9,403 nt of DNA from positions 1-9,403 of the forward strand of contig NW_021828335.1 of NCBI RefSeq assembly GCF_006345805.1, given 5' to 3'. Source of the stretch: Octopus sinensis (Eukaryota). The notes beneath the pieces were generated by a model. The model did no database searches. It was given only the letters and a program-made list of their open reading frames with translations, and had not been told where the DNA came from. Each line of letters starts with the position of its first letter. Positions within the stretch are counted from its first letter, which is position 1. The translations under genes and the position numbers were made by a program. Positions 1 to 8,986 of this stretch are shown here, one piece after another.

Positions 1-37
1 GCTTCTAGTCCATCCAATTTTTTAACAGAGATGTGGA

Positions 38-38
<1 letters not shown>

Positions 39-81
<43 letters not shown>

Positions 82-104
82 TGTGTGTGTGTGTGTGTGC
101 GTGT
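39..104. repeat. (GT)n microsatellite
   Basis: About 32 GT units with a few interruptions (GC, GA). Confidence 0.97.
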
Positions 105-179
105 TCTGTTTGCGTACGAGATGTACGTGTGCATTAATGTTTGAATAGCTATCAAGAAACATAGTTACACAGCCACGCA

Positions 180-346
180 CATACGTATACACACACATGC
201 AAATATGTATATATATATATGTATATATATTATATATATATATATAAGATGTATATATATAATATATAATATATATATATATATTTGATATATATATATA
301 TATATATATTATGTATATATGTATATATATATATAATATATGTATG

Positions 347-383
<37 letters not shown>

Positions 384-915
384 GTATGTATATATATATA
401 TATATATGTATGTCTATATATATATGTATAGATATATATCTATATATATATATATATATATAATTTATATATATATATATGTGTTATATATATAGATATA
501 TATATGCATATATGTAGTATATATATATTATATCCATATCCATATAGATAAAATATATATGTGTATATATGTATATACATATATATATATATATATAGAT
601 ATAAATATAAATATATATATATGCATATATATATCTAAATATATATGCATATGTATATACTTGTCTATATGTGCATATATGTATATATGTATACATATAT
701 GTGTGTGTATATATATATATATGTATATATATGTACATTTATTTATCTTTATTCACATATATGTGTATGTATATGTACATATACAAGTATGTATGTATAT
801 GAATGTATATGTATGTTTGTGTGTATGTATACATATATATATACACACACATATACACGCACATATATATACACACATACATACATACATACATGTATAT
901 ATATGTGTGTGTGTG
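180..915. repeat. Compound (TA)n/(TATG)n/(CA)n low-complexity tract
   Basis: Near-continuous degenerate TA, TATG and CA repeats. This is the source of the Y/I/C/V/H/T-rich ORFs. Confidence 0.95.
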
Positions 916-1045
916 AAATATACACAAGTGCACATGTTGATAAATGGGTTGGCATGAAACTGAAACCCCCTGAGTCACTGCAACCCCTGATAAGAGATAT
1001 AAACACCATCCTTGATGTATAAATTTCCGTTTTGTTTTGTCTGTA

Positions 1046-1246
1046 GGAGGTGCGTGGCTTAGCGGTTAGGGTGTTCGGCTCGTGACGGTGAGGCTGTGTG
1101 CTCAATTCCTGGCAACAGCAACACCAATGCGATGCGTCCTCGCTCCAGTTTGCTCAGCTGGTAAAAATGGATTGTACCGGTAATTCAAAAGGGGCCAGCC
1201 CTGTCATATTCTGTGTCATGCTGAATCTCCCTGTGAAATACATGAA
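1046..1246 (+). mobile_element. tRNA-derived SINE (family A body), 5' part, interrupted by the MITE array
   Basis: Head GGAGGTGCG, A-box TGGCTTAGCGG (1055-1065), degenerate B-box TGCTCAATTCC (1099-1109). 1178-1246 aligns to the reverse complement of about 5938-6003 in the intact SINE of this window. Confidence 0.85.
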
Positions 1247-3185
1247 CCCTTTCATTACCAACCTAGCTGAAACCACCCCTGGTTTTGAGTACAAATGTCT
1301 TGTTTTCATGAGTTTTGAATTAAAATCTTCCACCAAACCTTAGTCACAATTTACGTTCCTAACACTAGCTTAATGATAACTAAGATATTTTACTAAATTC
1401 TTTGTTATATTTAAAATTAATTGAAAGAACACAGAGCATCTCAAAATAAATACGGTAACAAACGGTTAAATCACCATGATATTTTTAACCCTTTTGATAC
1501 CAAGCCACTAAACTGCCTCTGGCTCTGTAGTACAAATGCTTTTGTTTCATAAGTTCTGAATTAAAATCTTCCACCAAACCTTAGTCACAATTTATGTTCC
1601 TAACACTAGCTTAATGATAACTAAGTTATTTTACTAAATTCTTTGTTATATTTAAAATTAATTGAAAGAAACACAGAACATCTCAAAATAAATACGGTAA
1701 CAAAAGAGTTAAAGTCACCATGATATTTTTAACCCTTTTGATACCAAGCCAACTAAAACTGCCTCTGGCTCTGTAGTACAAGTGTCTTGTTTTCATAAGT
1801 TCTGAATTAAAATCTTCCACCAAACCTTAGTCACAATTTATGTTCCTAACACTAGCTGAATGATAACTAAGATACTTTACTAAATTCTTTGTTATATTTA
1901 AAATTAATTGAAAGAAACACAGAACATCTCAAAATAAATACGGTAACAAAAGAGTTAAAGTCACCATGATATTTTAAACCCTTTTGATACCAACCTGGTT
2001 GAAACCACCTCTGGCTCTGTAGTACAAATGTCTTGTTTTCATAAATTCTGAATTAAAATCTTCCACCAAACCTTAGTCACAATTTATGTTCCTACACTAG
2101 CTGAATGATAACTAAGATACTTTACTAAATTCTTTGTTATTTTAAATTAATTGAAAGAACACAGAACATCTCAAAATAAATACGGTAACAAAAGAGGTTA
2201 AAGTCACCATGATATTTTTAACCCTTTTGATACCAAGCCAACTAAAACTGCCTCTGGCTCTGTAGTACAAATGTCTTGTTTTCATAAGTTCTGAATTAAA
2301 ATCTTCCACCAAACCTTAGTCACAATTTATGTTCCTAACACTAGCTGAATGATAACTAAGATACTTTACTAAATTCTTTGTTATATTTAAAATTAATTGA
2401 AAGAAACACAGAACATCTCAAAATAAATACGGTAACAAAAGAGTTAAAGTCACCATGATATTTTTAACCCTTTTGATACCAAGCCAACTAAAACTGCCTC
2501 TGGCTCTGTAGTACAAATGTCTTGTTTTCATAAGTTCTGAATTAAAATCTTCCACCAAACCTTAGTCACAATTTATGTTCCTAACACTAGCTGAATGATA
2601 ACTAAGATATTTTACTAAATTCTTTGTTATATTTAAAATTAATTGAAAGAAACACAGAACATCTCAAAATAAATACGGTAACAAAAGAGTTAAAGTCACC
2701 ATGATATTTTATAAACCCTTTTGATACCAAGCCAACTAAAACTGCCTCTGGCTCTATAGTACAAATATCTTGTTTTCATAAGTTTTGAATTAAAATCTTC
2801 CTCCAAACCTTAGTCACAATTTATGTTCCTAACATGAGCTCTAATTATAACTAAGTTATTTTACTAAATTCTTTGTTATATTTAAAATTAATTGAAAGAA
2901 ACACAGAGCATCTCAACAGAAATATGGTAATAAAAGTGTTCAAGTCACCATGATATTTTATAAACCCTTTTGATACCAAGCCAACTAAAACTGCCTCTGG
3001 CTCTATAGTACAAATGTCTTGTTTTCATAAGTTTTGAATTAAAATCTTCCACCAAACTTTAATCACAATTTATGTTCCTAACACTAGCTTACGGATAACT
3101 AAGTTACTTTACTAAATTCTTTGCTATATTTAAAATTATGTGAAAGAACCACAGAACATCTCAAGAGAAATATGTTAACAAAAGG
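1247..3185. repeat. Tandem array A: 8 units of a ~222-bp piggyBac-type MITE plus 16-bp spacer
   Basis: Unit starts at 1247, 1489, 1733, 1979, 2222, 2468, 2716, 2965 (period 242-249). Typical ends are TTAA|CCCTTTTGATACC and CGGTAACAAAAGAG|TTAA. Spacer consensus AGTCACCATGATATTT. Confidence 0.92.
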
Positions 3186-3386
3186 TGTGAGTGAATATAT
3201 GTATATATATGTCCATATATATCTGCATATATATGTATATATGTATATATATATATCTATTTATTTATATACACATATATATGCATGTATGTAAGTTATA
3301 ATAATTTGACTTGTTGAAAATTCTGGTATCATACTTTGCTTTTATGCTTAACACAATTCATACAAATTATACATACATACACAAGC

Positions 3387-3418
<32 letters not shown>

Positions 3419-3470
3419 GCATGTGTGAATGTATATTTTGTGTGTGTGTATGTATATACATATATATATG
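3186..3470. repeat. (TA)n/(TG)n-rich low-complexity tract between the arrays
   Basis: TA and TATG runs at about 3195-3290 and 3370-3470, separated by AT-rich sequence. Confidence 0.8.
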
Positions 3471-4599
3471 AGAAAAGTTGAGTTCAATTATAACGTTTTT
3501 GCTCTAGTTATTAGATTTCTAATACAGATTCTTCATATCAGAATTGTAGCTTATTTAAAAAATATTAAGATTTGACAAGTATAAGGTGTGTTATGAGCAT
3601 TTATAGAATATGTATTCTATAGAAACTTAACTAATAATTAAAGATGGAGAATGTTTTATAAAATTTTAATCCATGTAACTAAAACTTTTAACTTTTAAAG
3701 TTTTGAATTAAATCCTGAGTCACCATTTATGTTCCTAAAACTAGCTTAATGATAACTAAGTTATTTTACTAAATTCTTTGTTATATTTAAAATGAAATTG
3801 AAAGAAACACAGAGCATCTCAACAGAAATATGGTAACAAAAGGGTTCAAGTCACCATGATATTTTTAACCCTTTTGTTACCAACCCGGCTGAAACCGGCT
3901 CAGGCTCTGTAGTACAAATGTCATGTTTACGTAAGTTCTGAATTAAAATCTTCCACCAAACCTTAGTCACAATTTATGTCCTAACACTAGCTGAATCATA
4001 ACTAGTTATTTTACTAAATTCTTTGATATATTTAAAATGAAATTGAAAGAAACACAGAGCATCTCAACAGAAATATGGTAACAAAAGGGTTCAAGTCACC
4101 ATGATTTTTTAACCCTTTTGTTACAACCGGCTGAAACCGGCTCAGGCTCTGTAGTACAAATGTCATGTTTACGTAAGTTCTGAATTAAAATCTTCCACCA
4201 AACCTTAGTCACAATTTATGTTCCTAACACTAGCTGAATCATAACTAAGTTATTTTACTAAATTCTTTGCTATATTTAAAATGAAATTGAAGAAACACAG
4301 AGCATCTCAACAGAAATATGGTAACAAAAGGGTTCAAGCACCATGATATTTTTAACCCTTTTGCTACCAACCCGGCTGAAACCGGTCAGGCTCTGAGTAC
4401 AAATGTCATGTTTACGTAAGTTCTGAATTAAAATCTTCCACCAAACCTTAGTCACAATTTATGTCCTAACACTAGCTGAATCATAACTAAGTTATTTTAC
4501 TAAATTCTTTGCTATATTTAAAATGAAATTGAAAGAAACACAGAGCATCTCAACAGAAATATGGTAACAAAAGGGTTCAAGTCACCATGATATTTTTAA

Positions 4600-4822
4600 C
4601 CCTTTTGTTACCAACCCGGCTGAAACCGGCTCAGGCTCTGTAGTACAAATGTCATGTTTACGTAAGTTCTGAATTAAAATCTTCCACCAAACCTTAGTCA
4701 CAATTTATGTTCCTAACACTAGCTGAATCATAACTAAGTTATTTTACTAAATTCTTTGATATATTTAAAATGAAATTGAAAGAAACACAGAGCATCTCAA
4801 CAGAAATATGGTAACAAAAGGG
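4600..4822. mobile_element. Representative non-autonomous piggyBac-type MITE monomer (223 bp)
   Basis: TTAA|CCCTTTTGTTACCA ... TGGTAACAAAAGGG|TTCA: a perfect 14-bp TIR with CCC...GGG termini at TTAA-type sites, the established piggyBac signature. No coding capacity. Confidence 0.85.
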
Positions 4823-5275
4823 TTCAAGTCACCATGATATTTTTAACCCTTTTGTTACCAACCCGGCTGAAACCGGCTCAGGCTCTGTAGTACAAATGTC
4901 ATGTTTACGTAAGTTCTGAATTAAAATCTTCACCAAACCTTAGTCACAATTTATGTTCCTAACACTAGCTGAATCAGAACTAAGTATTTTTACTAAATTC
5001 TTTGTATATTAAAATGAAATTGAAAGAACACAGAGCATCTCAACAGAAATATGGTAACAAAAGGGTTCAAGTCACCATGATATTTTTAACCCTTTTGCTA
5101 CCCAAACCCGGCTGAACCGGCTCAGGCTCTGTAGTACAATGTCATGTTTACGTAAGTTCTGAATTAAAATCTTCCACCAAACCTTAGTCACAATTTATGT
5201 TCCTAACACTAGCTGAATGATAACTAAGTTATTTTACTAAATTCTTTTAAAATAATTGAAAGAAATACAGTGTAT

Positions 5276-5692
5276 AGGTGCAGGAGTGGCTGTGTGGTAA
5301 GTAGCTTGCTTACCAGCCACATGGTTCTGGGTTCAGTCCCACTGCATGGCACCTTGGGCAAGTGTCTTCTACTATAGCCTCTGGCCGACCAAAGCCTTGT
5401 GAGTGGATTTGGTAGACGGAAACTGAAAGAAGCCTGTCGTATATATGTATATATATATGTGTGTGTGTGCATGTGTTTGTGTGTCTGTGTTTGTCCCCCC
5501 CCAGCATCGCTTGACAACCGATGCTGGTGTGTTTACATCCCCGTAACTTAGCGGTTCAGCAAAAGAGACTGATAGAATAAGTACTAGGCTTACAAAGAAT
5601 AAGTCCTGGGGGTTGATTTGCTCAATTAAAGGCGGTGCTCCAGCATAGCCGCAGTCAAATGACCGAAAGAAGAAAAAGAGTAAAAGAGAGTA
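5276..5692 (+). mobile_element. tRNA-derived SINE family B, copy 1 (full length, inside the last MITE unit)
   Basis: A-box TGGCTGTGTGG (5287-5297), B-box GGTTCAGTCCC (5330-5340), CORE-like CCTTGGGCAAGT motif, internal (TA)/(TG) tract, (GTAAAAGA)-type tail. Probable TSD AGTGTAT (5269-5275) / AGAGTAT (5693-5699). Confidence 0.9.
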
Positions 5693-5730
5693 AGAGTATC
5701 TTGAAACAAATACGGTAACGAAAGGCTTCA

Positions 5731-5774
5731 GGGTACACATGTCTGTGGGATACTCAACCACTTGCACCTTAATT
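5731..5774 (+). mobile_element. Continuation of the SINE interrupted at 1246 (3' remnant)
   Basis: GGGTACACATGTCTGTGGGATACTCAACCACTTGCACCTTAATT aligns to GGTACACGTGTCTGTGGAGTGCTCAGCCACTTACACGTTATT (reverse complement of about 5896-5937), directly after the TTAA of the intact copy. Confidence 0.8.
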
Positions 5775-5822
5775 ACCCTAATCGCTAAGCCACGTGCTTT
5801 CACAAACTTTTGTCTGGGCATT

Positions 5823-6204
5823 GGGGGTAGCACTCCGTCGGTTACGACGACAAGGGTTCCGGTTGATCCGAATCAACGGAACAGCCCGCTCGTGAAATAA
5901 CGTGTAAGTGGCTGAGCACTCCACAGACACGTGTACCTTAACGTAGTTCTCGGGATATTCAGCGTGACACAGAGAGTGACAAGGCGGCCCTTTGAAATAC
6001 AGGTACAACAGAAACAGGAAGTAAGAGTGAGAGAAAGTTGTGGTGAAAGAGTATAGCAGGGATCACCACCATCCCCTGCCGGAGCCTCGTGGAGCTTTAG
6101 GTGTTTTTGCTCAATAAACACTCACAACGCCCGGTCTGGGAATCGAAACCGCGGTCCTATGACTGCGAGTCCGCTGCCCTAACCACTGGGCCATTGCGCC
6201 TCCA
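5823..6204 (-). mobile_element. tRNA-derived SINE family A, full-length copy (3' member of a dimer)
   Basis: Minus-strand head TGGAGGCGCAA, A-box TGGCCCAGTGG (6183-6193), B-box GTTTCGATTCC (6139-6149), two hairpins at the 3' end. Confidence 0.9.
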
Positions 6205-6422
6205 CCCTTTGAAATACAGGTACAACAGAAACAGGAAGTAAGAGTGAGAGAAAGTTGTGGCAAAAGAGTACAGCAGGGATCACCACCATCCCCTGCCGGA
6301 GCCTCGTGGAGCTTTTAGGTGTTTTCACTCAATAAACACTCACAACGCCCGGTCTGGGAATCGAAACCGTGATCCTATGACCGCGAGTCCGCTGCCCTAA
6401 CCACTGGGCCATTGCGCCTCCA
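6205..6422 (-). mobile_element. SINE family A, 5' half (upstream member of the dimer)
   Basis: Direct repeat of 5988-6204 with 8 substitutions and 1 indel. A-box 6401-6411, B-box 6357-6367. The dimer is flanked by GTCTGGGCATT at 5812-5822 and 6424-6434. Confidence 0.9.
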
Positions 6423-6782
6423 GGTCTGGGCATTATTGATTTATACAAATGTGTAAGGATGAAGGCCAGACTTGAATAAGCATGACTATAGTGGCAACGG
6501 AGTTTGTCGAGTGATGAATAAATAAACACTCTGAGCTATATATATATGTGTGTGCATATTTAGTTTCGCTGAGAAGCTAGGCTGGGTGAGGGCCTCCTTT
6601 TTCAGTTAAGACTCTGTTTAAATACAAATGGATTTGAATTCACACGTGTGTTTATAGTATCGGTAATGTTATTATTATTTTATAATATTTATATTATTTG
6701 TGTCTTTTATTTATGTTTTCATACTCACGCTGTAATGTTATTCTTTAAATATTGGAAGAGATTCATACACCGCATGTCTAGT

Positions 6783-6825
6783 TATATATATATATATATA
6801 TATCTAATATTATATATATATATAT
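6783..6825. repeat. (TA)n microsatellite abutting a SINE head
   Basis: Interrupted TA run. Confidence 0.9.
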
Positions 6826-6980
6826 AGGCGCAGGAGTGGCTGTTTGGTAAGTAGCTTGCTAACCAACCACATGGTTCCGGGTTCAGTCCCACTGCGTGGT
6901 ATCTTGGGCAAGTGTCTTCTGCTATAGGCCCGGGCCGACCAATGCCTTGTGAGTGGATTTGGTAGACGGAAACTGAAAGA
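6826..6980 (+). mobile_element. SINE family B, copy 2 (5' module only)
   Basis: AGGCGCAGGAG head through GGAAACTGAAAGA, homologous to 5276-5430 and to the start of copy 3. Confidence 0.9.
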
Positions 6981-7063
6981 CTTATTCTTTGTAAGCCCAG
7001 TACTTATTCTATCGGTCTCTTTTGCCGAACCGCTAAGTGACAGGGACGTAATCACACCAGCAT
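6979..7063 (-). mobile_element. Inverted internal fragment of the SINE family B 3' module
   Basis: Reverse complement of 7589-7675 with few differences. Confidence 0.9.
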
Positions 7064-7992: not shown

Positions 7993-8053
7993 TATAAGTG
8001 TGTATGCATGTCTGTTATTATGTGAGCGAATGTATGTATGTAGGTATGTGCGA

Positions 8054-8090
<37 letters not shown>

Positions 8091-8172
8091 GTATGTATAT
8101 TGGATATAAGTATAAATACTAGTGTATATATAAGTATGTGTGTATTTGTATGTTTGTTCATATATACATTTG
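7993..8172. repeat. (TA)n/(TATG)n low-complexity tract
   Basis: Pure TA run at about 8055-8083 within degenerate TATG/TG repeats. Confidence 0.9.
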
Positions 8173-8550: not shown

Positions 8551-8965
8551 TCTCTCTTACTCTTTTTACTCTTTTACTTGTTTCAGTCATTTGACTGCGG
8601 CCATGCTGGAGCACCGCCTTTAGTCAAGCAAATTGACCCCGGGACTTATTCTTTGTAAGCCCAGTACTTATACTATCGGTCTCTTTTGCCGAACCGCTAA
8701 GTGACGGGGACGTAAACACACACAGGGCATCGGTTGTCAAGCAATGCTAGGGGGACAAACACAGACACACACACACATACATATATATATATACATATAT
8801 ACGACAGGCTTCTTTCAGTTTCCGTCTACCAAATCCACTCACAAGGCATTGGTCATCCTGAGGCTATAGCAGAAGACACTTGCCCAAGATGCCACGCAGT
8901 GGGATTGAACCCAGAACCATGTGGTTGGTTAGCAAGCTACTTACCACACACCCACTCCTGCGCCT
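8551..8965 (-). mobile_element. SINE family B, copy 4 (full length)
   Basis: Reverse complement of copies 1 and 3, with tail (TCTTTTAC)n at 8551-8580, B-box at 8901-8911 and head ending at 8965. Confidence 0.92.
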
Positions 8966-8967
8966 AT

Positions 8968-8986
8968 AGATGATGATGATGATGAT
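8968..8986. repeat. (GAT)n microsatellite
   Basis: About six GAT units. Confidence 0.9.

What the first reader, a model, noticed from the sequence alone, without database searches (positions are those of the whole stretch)
1178..5774. The whole 4.5-kb block sits in the TTAA of one SINE, and its outermost ends are a private matching pair
Seen: the SINE stops at ...GAAATACA-TGAA (1246) and resumes at TTCA-GGGTACAC (5727). The intact paralogue in this window reads GAACTACG-TTAA-GGTACAC (TTAA at 5938-5941), giving an in-window empty site. The outer TIRs (CCCTTTCATTACC at 1247; reverse complement GCCTTTCGTTACC at 5714-5726) share a TTTC variant, while internal TIRs have TTTT or other variants. The outer flanks TGAA and TTCA are reverse complements of each other. 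Inference: either one MITE inserted and its interior was later expanded or converted into arrays, or the arrays moved as one composite transposon using the outer ends.
Basis: partly seen in the sequence, partly recalled or inferred. Interest (0 to 1): 0.7.

Follow-up and report, generated by a model that had tools for sequence, protein, structure and literature searches.

The report
MITE tandem array nested in a SINE
Fifteen head-to-tail copies of a small piggyBac-type transposon (about 4.5 kb) sit at one four-base site inside a short retroposon of an octopus-type genome; this is a clear but ordinary example of a mobile element turning into a tandem repeat.

Summary
One tRNA-type SINE (1044-1242 and 5731-5807) is split by a block (1247-5726) that starts on a MITE left end and stops on a MITE right end. 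Two SINE cores place the halves four bases apart. A 9-bp target duplication (TTTTGTCTG, shuffle p about 0.006) brackets the whole.

The block holds 15 units of a 220-bp MITE (13-bp ends CCCTTT..TACC), joined by TT(A/C)A + AGTCACCATGATATTT + TTAA. There are two sub-arrays (A, B), a 511-bp filler, and a later SINE inside the last unit.

The "private matching pair" does not hold. A copy of the same MITE in Octopus vulgaris, flanked by perfect TTAA, has TTTC at both ends. The site behaves as a decaying CpG, so TTTC is most simply the ancestral state.

The 16-bp spacer does not match the local SINE, so the junction came from elsewhere. The outer unit parts are 14-31% diverged and both flanks are mutated, while the array cores differ by under 1%. 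The likeliest history is therefore an old insertion of a two- or few-copy composite, amplified later in place. A solo MITE converted from another array cannot be excluded. This is a known kind of event, of modest interest.

The parts
1035..1043 (+). Left copy of the SINE-X target-site duplication, TTTTGTCTG
   Evidence: Longest direct match between the two outer SINE borders; 29 of 5000 shuffles reach it.
1044..1242 (+). SINE-X 5' part: tRNA-like head (GGAGGTGCGTGGCTTAGCGGTTAGGG...) plus the left part of the shared core
   Evidence: Aligns to the SINE-Y core up to its TTAA, to the L001 SINE through TGAA, and to core profile positions 4-95.
1243..1246 (.). Left flank tetranucleotide TGAA (decayed TTAA, or native SINE sequence)
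   Evidence: SINE-Y has TTAA here and the L001 SINE has TGAA.
1247..1259 (+). Outer left terminal inverted repeat, CCCTTTCATTACC
   Evidence: Identical to the reverse complement of the right end of the O. vulgaris copy Lv1.
1247..3186 (+). Sub-array A: 8 MITE units (A1-A8), period 242-249
   Evidence: TRF gives period 246, 7.7 copies, 94% matches. Unit ends, alignment. A3, A5 and A6 differ by 0.5-0.9%. Edge units A1, A7 and A8 are more diverged.
3187..3697 (.). Filler between the sub-arrays: TA/TG microsatellites plus about 240 bp of unique sequence. It replaces one junction and the first 64 positions or so of unit B0.
   Evidence: B0 matches unit profile positions 65-244 at 3698-3866. No match in L001-L003.
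3698..5275 (+). Sub-array B: truncated B0, units B1-B5, and the 5' part of B6
   Evidence: TRF gives period 243, 6.3 copies, 96% matches. B1-B4 differ by 0-0.9%.
5276..5692 (+). Common octopus SINE inserted into the last unit B6 (borders within about 5 bp)
   Evidence: blastn finds 89% identity over 426 columns to the copy at 8555-8970. Absent from all other units. Possible 7-bp duplication AGTGTAT / AGAGTAT at 5269-5275 and 5693-5699, read by eye; an exact-match test found nothing beyond chance (longest match 4 bp, p=0.85).
5700..5726 (+). 3' end of B6, with the outer right terminal inverted repeat GGTAACGAAAGGC at 5714-5726
   Evidence: The right segment of the B6 row (alignment columns 165-232) is 15-25% from every other unit.
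5727..5730 (.). Right flank tetranucleotide TTCA
   Evidence: It is the extra four bases relative to both reference SINE cores.
5731..5807 (+). SINE-X 3' part: right part of the core plus the tail
   Evidence: Aligns to SINE-Y 503-546, to the L001 SINE directly after its TGAA, and to core profile positions 93-139.
5808..5816 (+). Right copy of the SINE-X target-site duplication, TTTTGTCTG
5823..6421 (-). Uninterrupted core with TTAA at 5938-5941; own duplication GTCTGGGCATT at 5812-5822 and 6424-6434.
   Evidence: shuffle p=0.0002.

Best explanation
A tRNA-type SINE (SINE-X) retroposed here first, making the 9-bp duplication TTTTGTCTG. Long ago, a TTAA-specific cut-and-paste transposase of the piggyBac type inserted an element into the single TTAA-type site of the SINE core. 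That element was bounded by a MITE left end and a MITE right end. It most likely already held at least one internal junction (right end, TTAA, 16-bp spacer, TTAA, left end). In other words it was a dimer or short oligomer formed elsewhere, where two copies had landed in neighbouring TTAA sites, and it was mobilised as a composite through its outermost ends (inferred). Unequal crossing-over or replication slippage between units then multiplied and homogenised the interior in place (shown by the divergence pattern). The outer 70-120 bp at each edge and the two flank tetranucleotides could not take part and simply decayed, from TTAA to TGAA and TTCA, with CpG loss. A 511-bp filler later split the array into two separately homogenised sub-arrays. 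A common SINE landed in the last unit, and SINE-Y landed next to the 3' end of SINE-X.
For: Nesting is shown. The halves are collinear on two reference cores. The SINE duplication has p about 0.006. The block starts and ends exactly on unit ends, which chance gives about 1.7e-5 of the time. The family is a real TTAA-flanked MITE with CCC...GGG termini: L003 16260-16486 reads TTAA-CCCTTTCAATACC...GGTAATGAAAGGG-TTAA and is about 91% identical to window units. Direct dimers across a short TTAA-to-TTAA spacer occur elsewhere, with a different 23-bp spacer. The spacer is foreign to this site: no significant similarity to either SINE flank, and no SINE bases are missing at the site. The internal left end CCCTTTTGATACC is identical to that of the independent copy Lv2. 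The outer left end equals the reverse complement of the right end of Lv1, so inner and outer ends belong to different family lineages. In-place amplification long after arrival is supported by divergence: cores differ by 0-0.9%; A and B differ by about 9-10%; the outer left part is 14-31% and the outer right part 15-25% from everything else; units at sub-array edges are more diverged than central ones; and the SINE in B6 was never copied. At 15% divergence, both 4-bp copies carry at least one change with probability 0.23. Tandem arrays of complete piggyBac-related MITEs, some with uniform gaps, are described in corals (PMC2872659).
Against: No second locus with the same 16-bp junction could be looked for, because no octopus genome is searchable by DNA here. 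Composite movement is therefore inferred, not seen. A simple two-copy founder predicts inner units built from a B-type left part and an A-type right part. The real units are more mosaic: the A-type and B-type right ends match two different dispersed lineages (Lv2-like and Lv1-like). So more founders, or exchange with other copies, are needed. The flank tetranucleotides are not TTAA. The closest SINE relative reads TGAA at the site. The outer right end finishes GGC rather than GGG. The many 1-bp indels in B units may be assembly errors.
Confidence: 0.5

Rival explanations
1. A single MITE inserted into the SINE site. Later its interior was replaced or expanded. Either a break inside it was repaired from an array of the same family elsewhere (ectopic gene conversion importing junctions), or a first tandem duplication was cut exactly at the TTAA borders and sealed with 16 bp of filler. 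Unequal crossing-over in place followed.
For: It explains equally well the old, decayed outer 70-120 bp and flanks around a young interior and the foreign spacer. The two outer ends differ from a common CpG-bearing ancestor CCCTTTCGTTACC by one change each. Replication slippage was the mechanism proposed for coral MITE arrays.
Against: Conversion still needs a donor array with this junction elsewhere, which has not been observed. A filler origin would need breakpoints exactly outside both TTAA copies and a 16-bp insert of unknown source. The TTAA on each side of the spacer looks like two real insertion sites, as at L003. The shared TTTC gives no support, because it is most simply ancestral.
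Confidence: 0.3
2. The whole present 4.5-kb structure (array A, filler, array B, SINE in B6) moved here recently as one composite transposon.
For: The block is bounded by one left and one right end at one site.
Against: Both flank tetranucleotides are mutated. The outer right end finishes GGC. The outer unit parts are 14-31% diverged while the cores differ by under 1%. Central units are more uniform than edge units in each sub-array, which is the signature of homogenisation in place after the filler arrived.
Confidence: 0.05
3. The array size or arrangement is partly an assembly artefact: collapsed, expanded or mis-joined near-identical repeats. The biological structure may be shorter or differently ordered.
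For: Units within each core are 99-100% identical, and many differences are 1-bp indels in homopolymers, as is typical of long-read consensus errors.
Against: The borders, the diverged edge units, the filler and the SINE in B6 are unique anchors that an assembler places unambiguously. The A and B types are distinct.
Confidence: 0.1
4. The two SINE pieces are unrelated fragments that happen to flank a satellite, so nothing was inserted into a SINE.
For: The 'intact paralogue' is another SINE family. Only the core is shared.
Against: Both pieces abut exactly on two independent reference cores, with similar identity (about 80% and 84%). A 9-bp duplication brackets them. The array phase matches the unit ends at both borders.
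Confidence: 0.02

Closest known systems
Tandem arrays of complete piggyBac-related MITEs (CMITE) in Acropora corals (Wang et al. 2010, PMC2872659)
   Same: Full-size MITEs lie head to tail, some with uniform gaps between them. Elements and gaps are both highly similar. The elements are linked to piggyBac-type machinery.
   Different: Here the array's outer borders are visible and coincide with one target site inside a datable host element. The edges are old and the cores young. It is a different host phylum and an unrelated MITE sequence.
MITE- and TE-derived satellite DNAs (for example Xstir in Xenopus and MITE-related satellites of oysters and other bivalves; review PMC6947457)
   Same: A mobile element becomes the monomer of a tandem repeat that grows by unequal crossing-over and evolves in concert.
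   Different: This is a short local array (15 units), not a chromosomal satellite. Each monomer keeps both inverted ends and its TTAA-type flanks. The monomer includes a foreign 16-bp spacer.
piggyBac superfamily cut-and-paste transposition (structure and mechanism: PMC7351741)
   Same: TTAA target, CCC...GGG termini, and short 13-bp terminal inverted repeats. Excision tolerates non-TTAA flanks and carries a 4-nt flank overhang.
   Different: No transposase was identified here. The flanks of the block are TGAA and TTCA. Kolobok and some other superfamilies also use TTAA (PMC6004289 is listed; the rest is from memory).
Composite transposons (two element copies mobilising what lies between them)
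   Same: An outer left end and an outer right end from different copies would be used together.
   Different: The copies are direct repeats of a non-autonomous MITE, and the cargo is more copies of itself. Movement as a unit is inferred, not observed.

Membership tests
piggyBac-type (TTAA-specific) MITE | TTAA target-site duplication flanking the element | tested here: met
   The L003 copy is flanked by perfect TTAA on both sides. Most internal units have TTAA on the left and TTAA or TTCA on the right. The outer flanks of the block are TGAA and TTCA, each one change from TTAA.
piggyBac-type (TTAA-specific) MITE | Short terminal inverted repeats with 5'-CCC...GGG-3' termini | tested here: met
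   13-bp ends CCCTTT(T/C)(G/A)(A/T)TACC and GGTA(A/T)C(A/G)AAAGGG in 14 left and 15 right ends, and in L003. That CCC/GGG is typical of piggyBac is from memory.
piggyBac-type (TTAA-specific) MITE | Small, non-coding, multi-copy and dispersed | tested here: met
   About 220 bp, with only short chance ORFs. An independent locus was found in only 60 kb of sampled O. vulgaris DNA.
piggyBac-type (TTAA-specific) MITE | An autonomous partner with matching ends that encodes a piggyBac (DDE_Tnp_1_7) transposase | not testable with these tools
   No octopus genome is searchable here. PMC13282606 lists PiggyBac among recently active O. vulgaris DNA transposons, but its ends were not compared.
MITE-derived tandem array (as coral CMITE arrays) | Head-to-tail complete elements with uniform junctions; elements and junctions both highly similar | tested here: met
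   TRF gives periods 246 and 243 with 94-96% matches. The same 16-bp spacer is present at all 13 internal junctions (D8).
Composite transposon that moved as a unit | The same internal arrangement at other loci with different flanks and an intact target duplication | not testable with these tools
   Protein-word searches on the array junction ORF, a metagenome scan and exact-ORF look-ups found nothing. At this locus the duplication is not intact.
tRNA-derived SINE (the host element) | tRNA-like head with A and B boxes, and target-site duplication of variable length | tested here: inconclusive
   Duplications are present for SINE-X (9 bp, p about 0.006) and SINE-Y (11 bp, p=0.0002). The heads read like A and B boxes by eye (TGGCTTAGCGG; GGTTTCGATTCC in SINE-Y). 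ARAGORN and Rfam find no tRNA.

The most novel reading that the evidence does not exclude
Arrays of complete MITEs may themselves be mobile units in this genome. The transposase would pair the outermost left and right ends and move a multi-copy array, so arrays would seed new arrays by cut-and-paste. Under this reading the odd flanks are a footprint of that event. The right-hand TTCA would be the 4-nt overhang carried over from a TTCA-type junction of the donor array, and TGAA would be the native, non-canonical target. The repeated finding of direct MITE neighbours (L003, L001) would then reflect a family-wide tendency to insert next to resident copies.
Probability: 0.12. Interest if true: 0.55.

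Novelty: new member of a known kind. Interest (0 to 1): 0.28.

Why it matters
The locus is a compact, datable record of how a cut-and-paste element becomes a tandem repeat. The host SINE fixes the insertion point. The decayed edges mark the arrival, and the near-identical cores mark later growth in place. If the same junction is found at other sites, it would show that MITE arrays spread as composite transposons. That would be one route for disseminating satellite-like DNA, and it bears on repeat annotation in cephalopod genomes. As it stands, the finding adds an example rather than a new principle.

Tried and rejected
- **RNA scans:** ARAGORN found no tRNA. The Rfam E-value scan gave only sub-threshold microRNA matches on TA/TG microsatellites.
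- **Exact-ORF look-ups:** the two ORFs spanning the left and right junctions, and two microsatellite ORFs, are not on record.
- **Protein-word searches:** an array-junction ORF and the translated, joined empty-site SINE shared no words with any protein.
- **Metagenome scan:** the most conserved 24-mer of the MITE gave 0 hits. A second scan was judged pointless.
- **Bacterial, phage and plasmid collections:** not searched, because they cannot hold this DNA.
- **Spacer origin:** the 16-bp spacer was compared with both SINE flanks, the SINE-Y core and the unit interior, on both strands. The best result was p=0.035 among 12 tests (reverse complement of a B-specific internal stretch), so it was rejected as chance.
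- **Spacer as part of the element:** rejected, because the L003 copy has different flanks.
- **Junction from a circularised element plus rolling circle:** rejected, because that would leave a single TTAA and no spacer (reasoning).
- **Right SINE half as an inverted second SINE copy:** rejected, because 5731-5773 matches the core in the + sense. Only a 20-nt head motif is inverted there.
- **Filler as a known repeat:** no match in 60 kb of O. vulgaris DNA.
Full report
**What the window is.** The sequence is SINE-rich animal DNA full of TA/TG microsatellites. An ORF from its commonest SINE matches three 'hypothetical' proteins of Octopus vulgaris. I fetched their loci, L001-L003, 20 kb each, from assembly GCA_951406725.2. 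They contain the same SINE families and the same MITE family. The window therefore comes from an octopus or a close relative. The exact species was not established.

**Checking the observation.**
- The left SINE piece ends ...GAAATACA-TGAA at 1246. The block begins CCCTTTCATTACC at 1247 and ends GGTAACGAAAGGC at 5726. The SINE resumes TTCA-GGGTACAC at 5727.
- Against the uninterrupted SINE on the minus strand (SINE-Y, 5823-6421), the left piece aligns to positions 432-498 and the right piece to 503-546. Only the TTAA at 499-502 (window 5938-5941) lies between them.
- A second reference, a SINE in O. vulgaris (L001, about 19985-20215, minus strand), gives the same result. The left piece aligns through its TGAA, and the right piece starts directly after it.
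- A profile built from the three cores places 1153-1246 on positions 4-95 and 5728-5774 on positions 93-139.
- The SINE-Y core has one TTAA in 136 bases.
- New evidence: a 9-bp direct repeat TTTTGTCTG lies two bases before the SINE head (1035-1043) and right after its tail (5808-5816). Only 29 of 5000 shuffles give a match that long.
- One caveat: SINE-Y is not the same SINE family. Heads and tails differ, and only a core of about 115-135 bp is shared.

**Anatomy of the block.** TRF finds two arrays, 1288-3184 (period 246, 7.7 copies, 94% matches) and 3714-5247 (period 243, 6.3 copies, 96% matches). A motif scan finds 14 left ends and 15 right ends, all in one orientation.
- Each unit is a MITE of about 220 bp with 13-bp inverted ends, CCCTTTTG(A/T)TACC and GGTAACAAAAG(G/A)G.
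- Each unit is followed by the junction TT(A/C)A + AGTCACCATGATATTT + TTAA. This junction is the same at all 13 internal junctions.
- Sub-array A holds units A1-A8 (1247-3186).
- A filler of 511 bp (3187-3697), made of microsatellite plus unique sequence, replaces one junction and the first 64 positions or so of unit B0.
- Sub-array B holds B0-B6 (3698-5726).
- The last unit carries a copy of the common octopus SINE (about 5276-5692, 89% identical to the copy at 8555-8970). No other unit has it.
- The block starts on base 1 of a left end and stops on the last base of a right end. For a period of 244, chance gives this about 1.7e-5 of the time. Transposition through those ends is the only reasonable reading.

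**The family is a real TTAA-type MITE, and TTTC is not private.** In only 60 kb of O. vulgaris DNA, the family turned up once, at L003 16260-16725.
- The first copy there (Lv1) is complete and reads TTAA-CCCTTTCAATACC...GGTAATGAAAGGG-TTAA.
- It is followed by a different 23-bp spacer, another TTAA, and a second direct copy (Lv2, left end CCCTTTTGATACC) truncated at its 3' end.
- This shows three things. The 16-bp spacer of the window is not part of the element. The TTTC variant occurs at both ends of an unrelated copy.
- The right end of Lv1, reverse-complemented, is CCCTTTCATTACC, identical to the window's outer left end.
- The variable position behaves as a CpG. The outer right end has CG, the outer left end and Lv1 left have CA, Lv1 right has TG, and internal ends have TG (left) and CA (right).
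- The same CG/TG/CA pattern appears at five other columns of the unit alignment.
- The simplest reading is an ancestral CCCTTTCGTTACC. On that reading, the shared 'C' of the outer ends is a retained ancestral state and says nothing about their being a pair.

**Where the copies were made.** Pairwise differences are as follows.

| Comparison | Divergence |
|---|---|
| Core units A3, A5, A6 | 0.5-0.9% |
| Core units B1-B4 | 0-0.9% |
| A versus B | about 9-10% (similar to either versus Lv1 or Lv2) |
| First 70 bp or so of A1 versus every other left part | 14-31% |
| Right segment of B6 (alignment columns 165-232) versus every other right part | 15-25% |

- Units at the edges of each sub-array (A1, A7, A8, B0, B5, B6) are more diverged than central ones.
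- B6 is a chimera. Its left 100 bp or so is B-like, and its right part is an older lineage that keeps the ancestral length where both A and B units have small insertions.
- A4 shares derived states with A1 in its left part, so the outer unit has exchanged sequence with the interior.
- This is the classical pattern of unequal exchange in place, with homogenised centres and decaying edges. It occurs separately in A and B, so it continued after the filler arrived.
- At about 15% divergence, each 4-bp flank copy has a 0.48 chance of at least one change, and both together 0.23. TGAA and TTCA need no special explanation.
- A recent move of the present 4.5 kb is not credible.

**Where the junction came from.** The spacer has TTAA-type tetranucleotides on both sides, like two real insertion sites.
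- It shows no significant similarity to either SINE flank, to the SINE-Y core, or to the unit interior. The best of 12 tests gave p=0.035.
- No SINE bases are missing at the site.
- A tandem duplication of a solo copy would put local flank sequence in the junction, and it does not.
- The internal left end (CCCTTTTGATACC) is identical to Lv2's and differs at three positions from the outer left end. Inner and outer ends therefore belong to different family lineages.
- The junction was therefore imported. One route is inside a dimer or oligomer that transposed as a composite; I rate this the best explanation at about 0.5. The other is repair or conversion of a solo copy from an array elsewhere, at about 0.3.
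- The L003 dimer shows that the nucleating step does occur: two direct copies across a short TTAA-to-TTAA spacer.
- I could not test the decisive prediction, which is the same junction at other loci. None of the collections searchable by DNA yielded octopus sequence: the one metagenome scan found nothing and the others hold only phage, plasmid and prokaryotic DNA. The protein-based routes also found nothing.
- A weakness of the simple two-founder model is that the A-type and B-type right ends correspond to two haplotypes also seen in dispersed copies: CAAAAT..ATAC as in Lv2, and CAACAG..ATAT as in Lv1. This implies more founders, or exchange with other copies.

**The odd flanks.**
- Two coincidences stand out. 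The closest SINE relative (L001) reads TGAA at this very site. TTCA is also the right flank at 7 of 13 internal junctions.
- piggyBac opens its hairpins to leave a 4-nt overhang copied from the donor flank, and it excises from non-TTAA flanks (PMC7351741). A TTCA donor flank could therefore in principle be carried to a new site.
- I rate this as unlikely. The right end of B6 is not of the B lineage. A TGAA target would mismatch that overhang at two of four positions. Ordinary decay is sufficient.
- It is recorded as the most novel reading (probability about 0.12).

**Comparison with what is known.** Tandem arrays of complete piggyBac-related MITEs, some with uniform gaps, were described in Acropora and attributed to replication slippage (PMC2872659).
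- The turning of transposable elements, MITEs included, into tandem repeats by unequal crossing-over is reviewed in PMC6947457.
- PiggyBac elements are listed among recently active DNA transposons of O. vulgaris (PMC13282606).
- The locus passes the tests I could run for a TTAA-specific, CCC...GGG-ended MITE and for a MITE-derived array. The transposase partner and movement as a composite could not be tested.

**Verdict.** The finding is real and the anatomy is clear. The 'private pair' inference is wrong. The history is best read as an old insertion of a small composite, or of a solo copy later converted, followed by amplification in place. It is a new member of a known kind. Interest: 0.28.

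Noticed in passing
window 1053-1072 and 5775-5794: The head motif of SINE-X, CGTGGCTTAGCGGTTAGGGT, recurs inverted (19/20) in the SINE's own 3' tail. None of 2000 shuffles reached this score. A SINE with complementary head and tail is unusual. It may be a family feature or a local rearrangement.
   Followed up: partly
window 5988-6204 and 6205-6422: SINE-Y carries an internal tandem duplication of about 217 bp covering its head and body (95-97% identity), so it has two tRNA-like heads.
   Followed up: partly
window 5808-5822 and 6424-6434: SINE-Y inserted immediately after the 3' end of SINE-X. Its 11-bp duplication GTCTGGGCATT (p=0.0002) overlaps SINE-X's duplication TTTTGTCTG by five bases, which gives the order X first, then Y.
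   Followed up: yes
window 6823-7057: A copy of the common octopus SINE has positions 3-160 in the + sense, directly followed by positions 250-328 inverted. This is an internal deletion plus inversion.
   Followed up: partly
window 3187-3697: A 511-bp filler between the two sub-arrays, made of TA/TG microsatellites and about 240 bp of unique AT-rich sequence of unknown origin. It starts within a base of the end of unit A8 and replaces one junction plus about 64 positions of unit B0.
   Followed up: partly
L003 16260-16725 (Octopus vulgaris OX597827.1): A direct dimer of the same MITE family. A complete TTAA-flanked copy is followed by the 23-bp spacer AATATATAATAGAGAAACAATTC, a TTAA, and a second copy truncated at its 3' end. 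The two copies differ by about 9%.
   Followed up: yes
L001 10990-11900 (Octopus vulgaris OX597836.1): A second MITE family with TTAA-CCCTTT(C/T)A... ends is present as two direct neighbours 330-360 bp apart. Their spacers are also duplicated (about 80% identity). A further left-end-like TTAACCCTTTTGTGACC lies at 11845. Duplication of a MITE with its spacer seems recurrent in octopus DNA.
   Followed up: partly
window 1-930, 3195-3470, 8030-8160: Long TA/TG microsatellite tracts produce dozens of sub-threshold Rfam microRNA matches (mir-297, mir-466 and others). These are low-complexity artefacts.
   Followed up: yes
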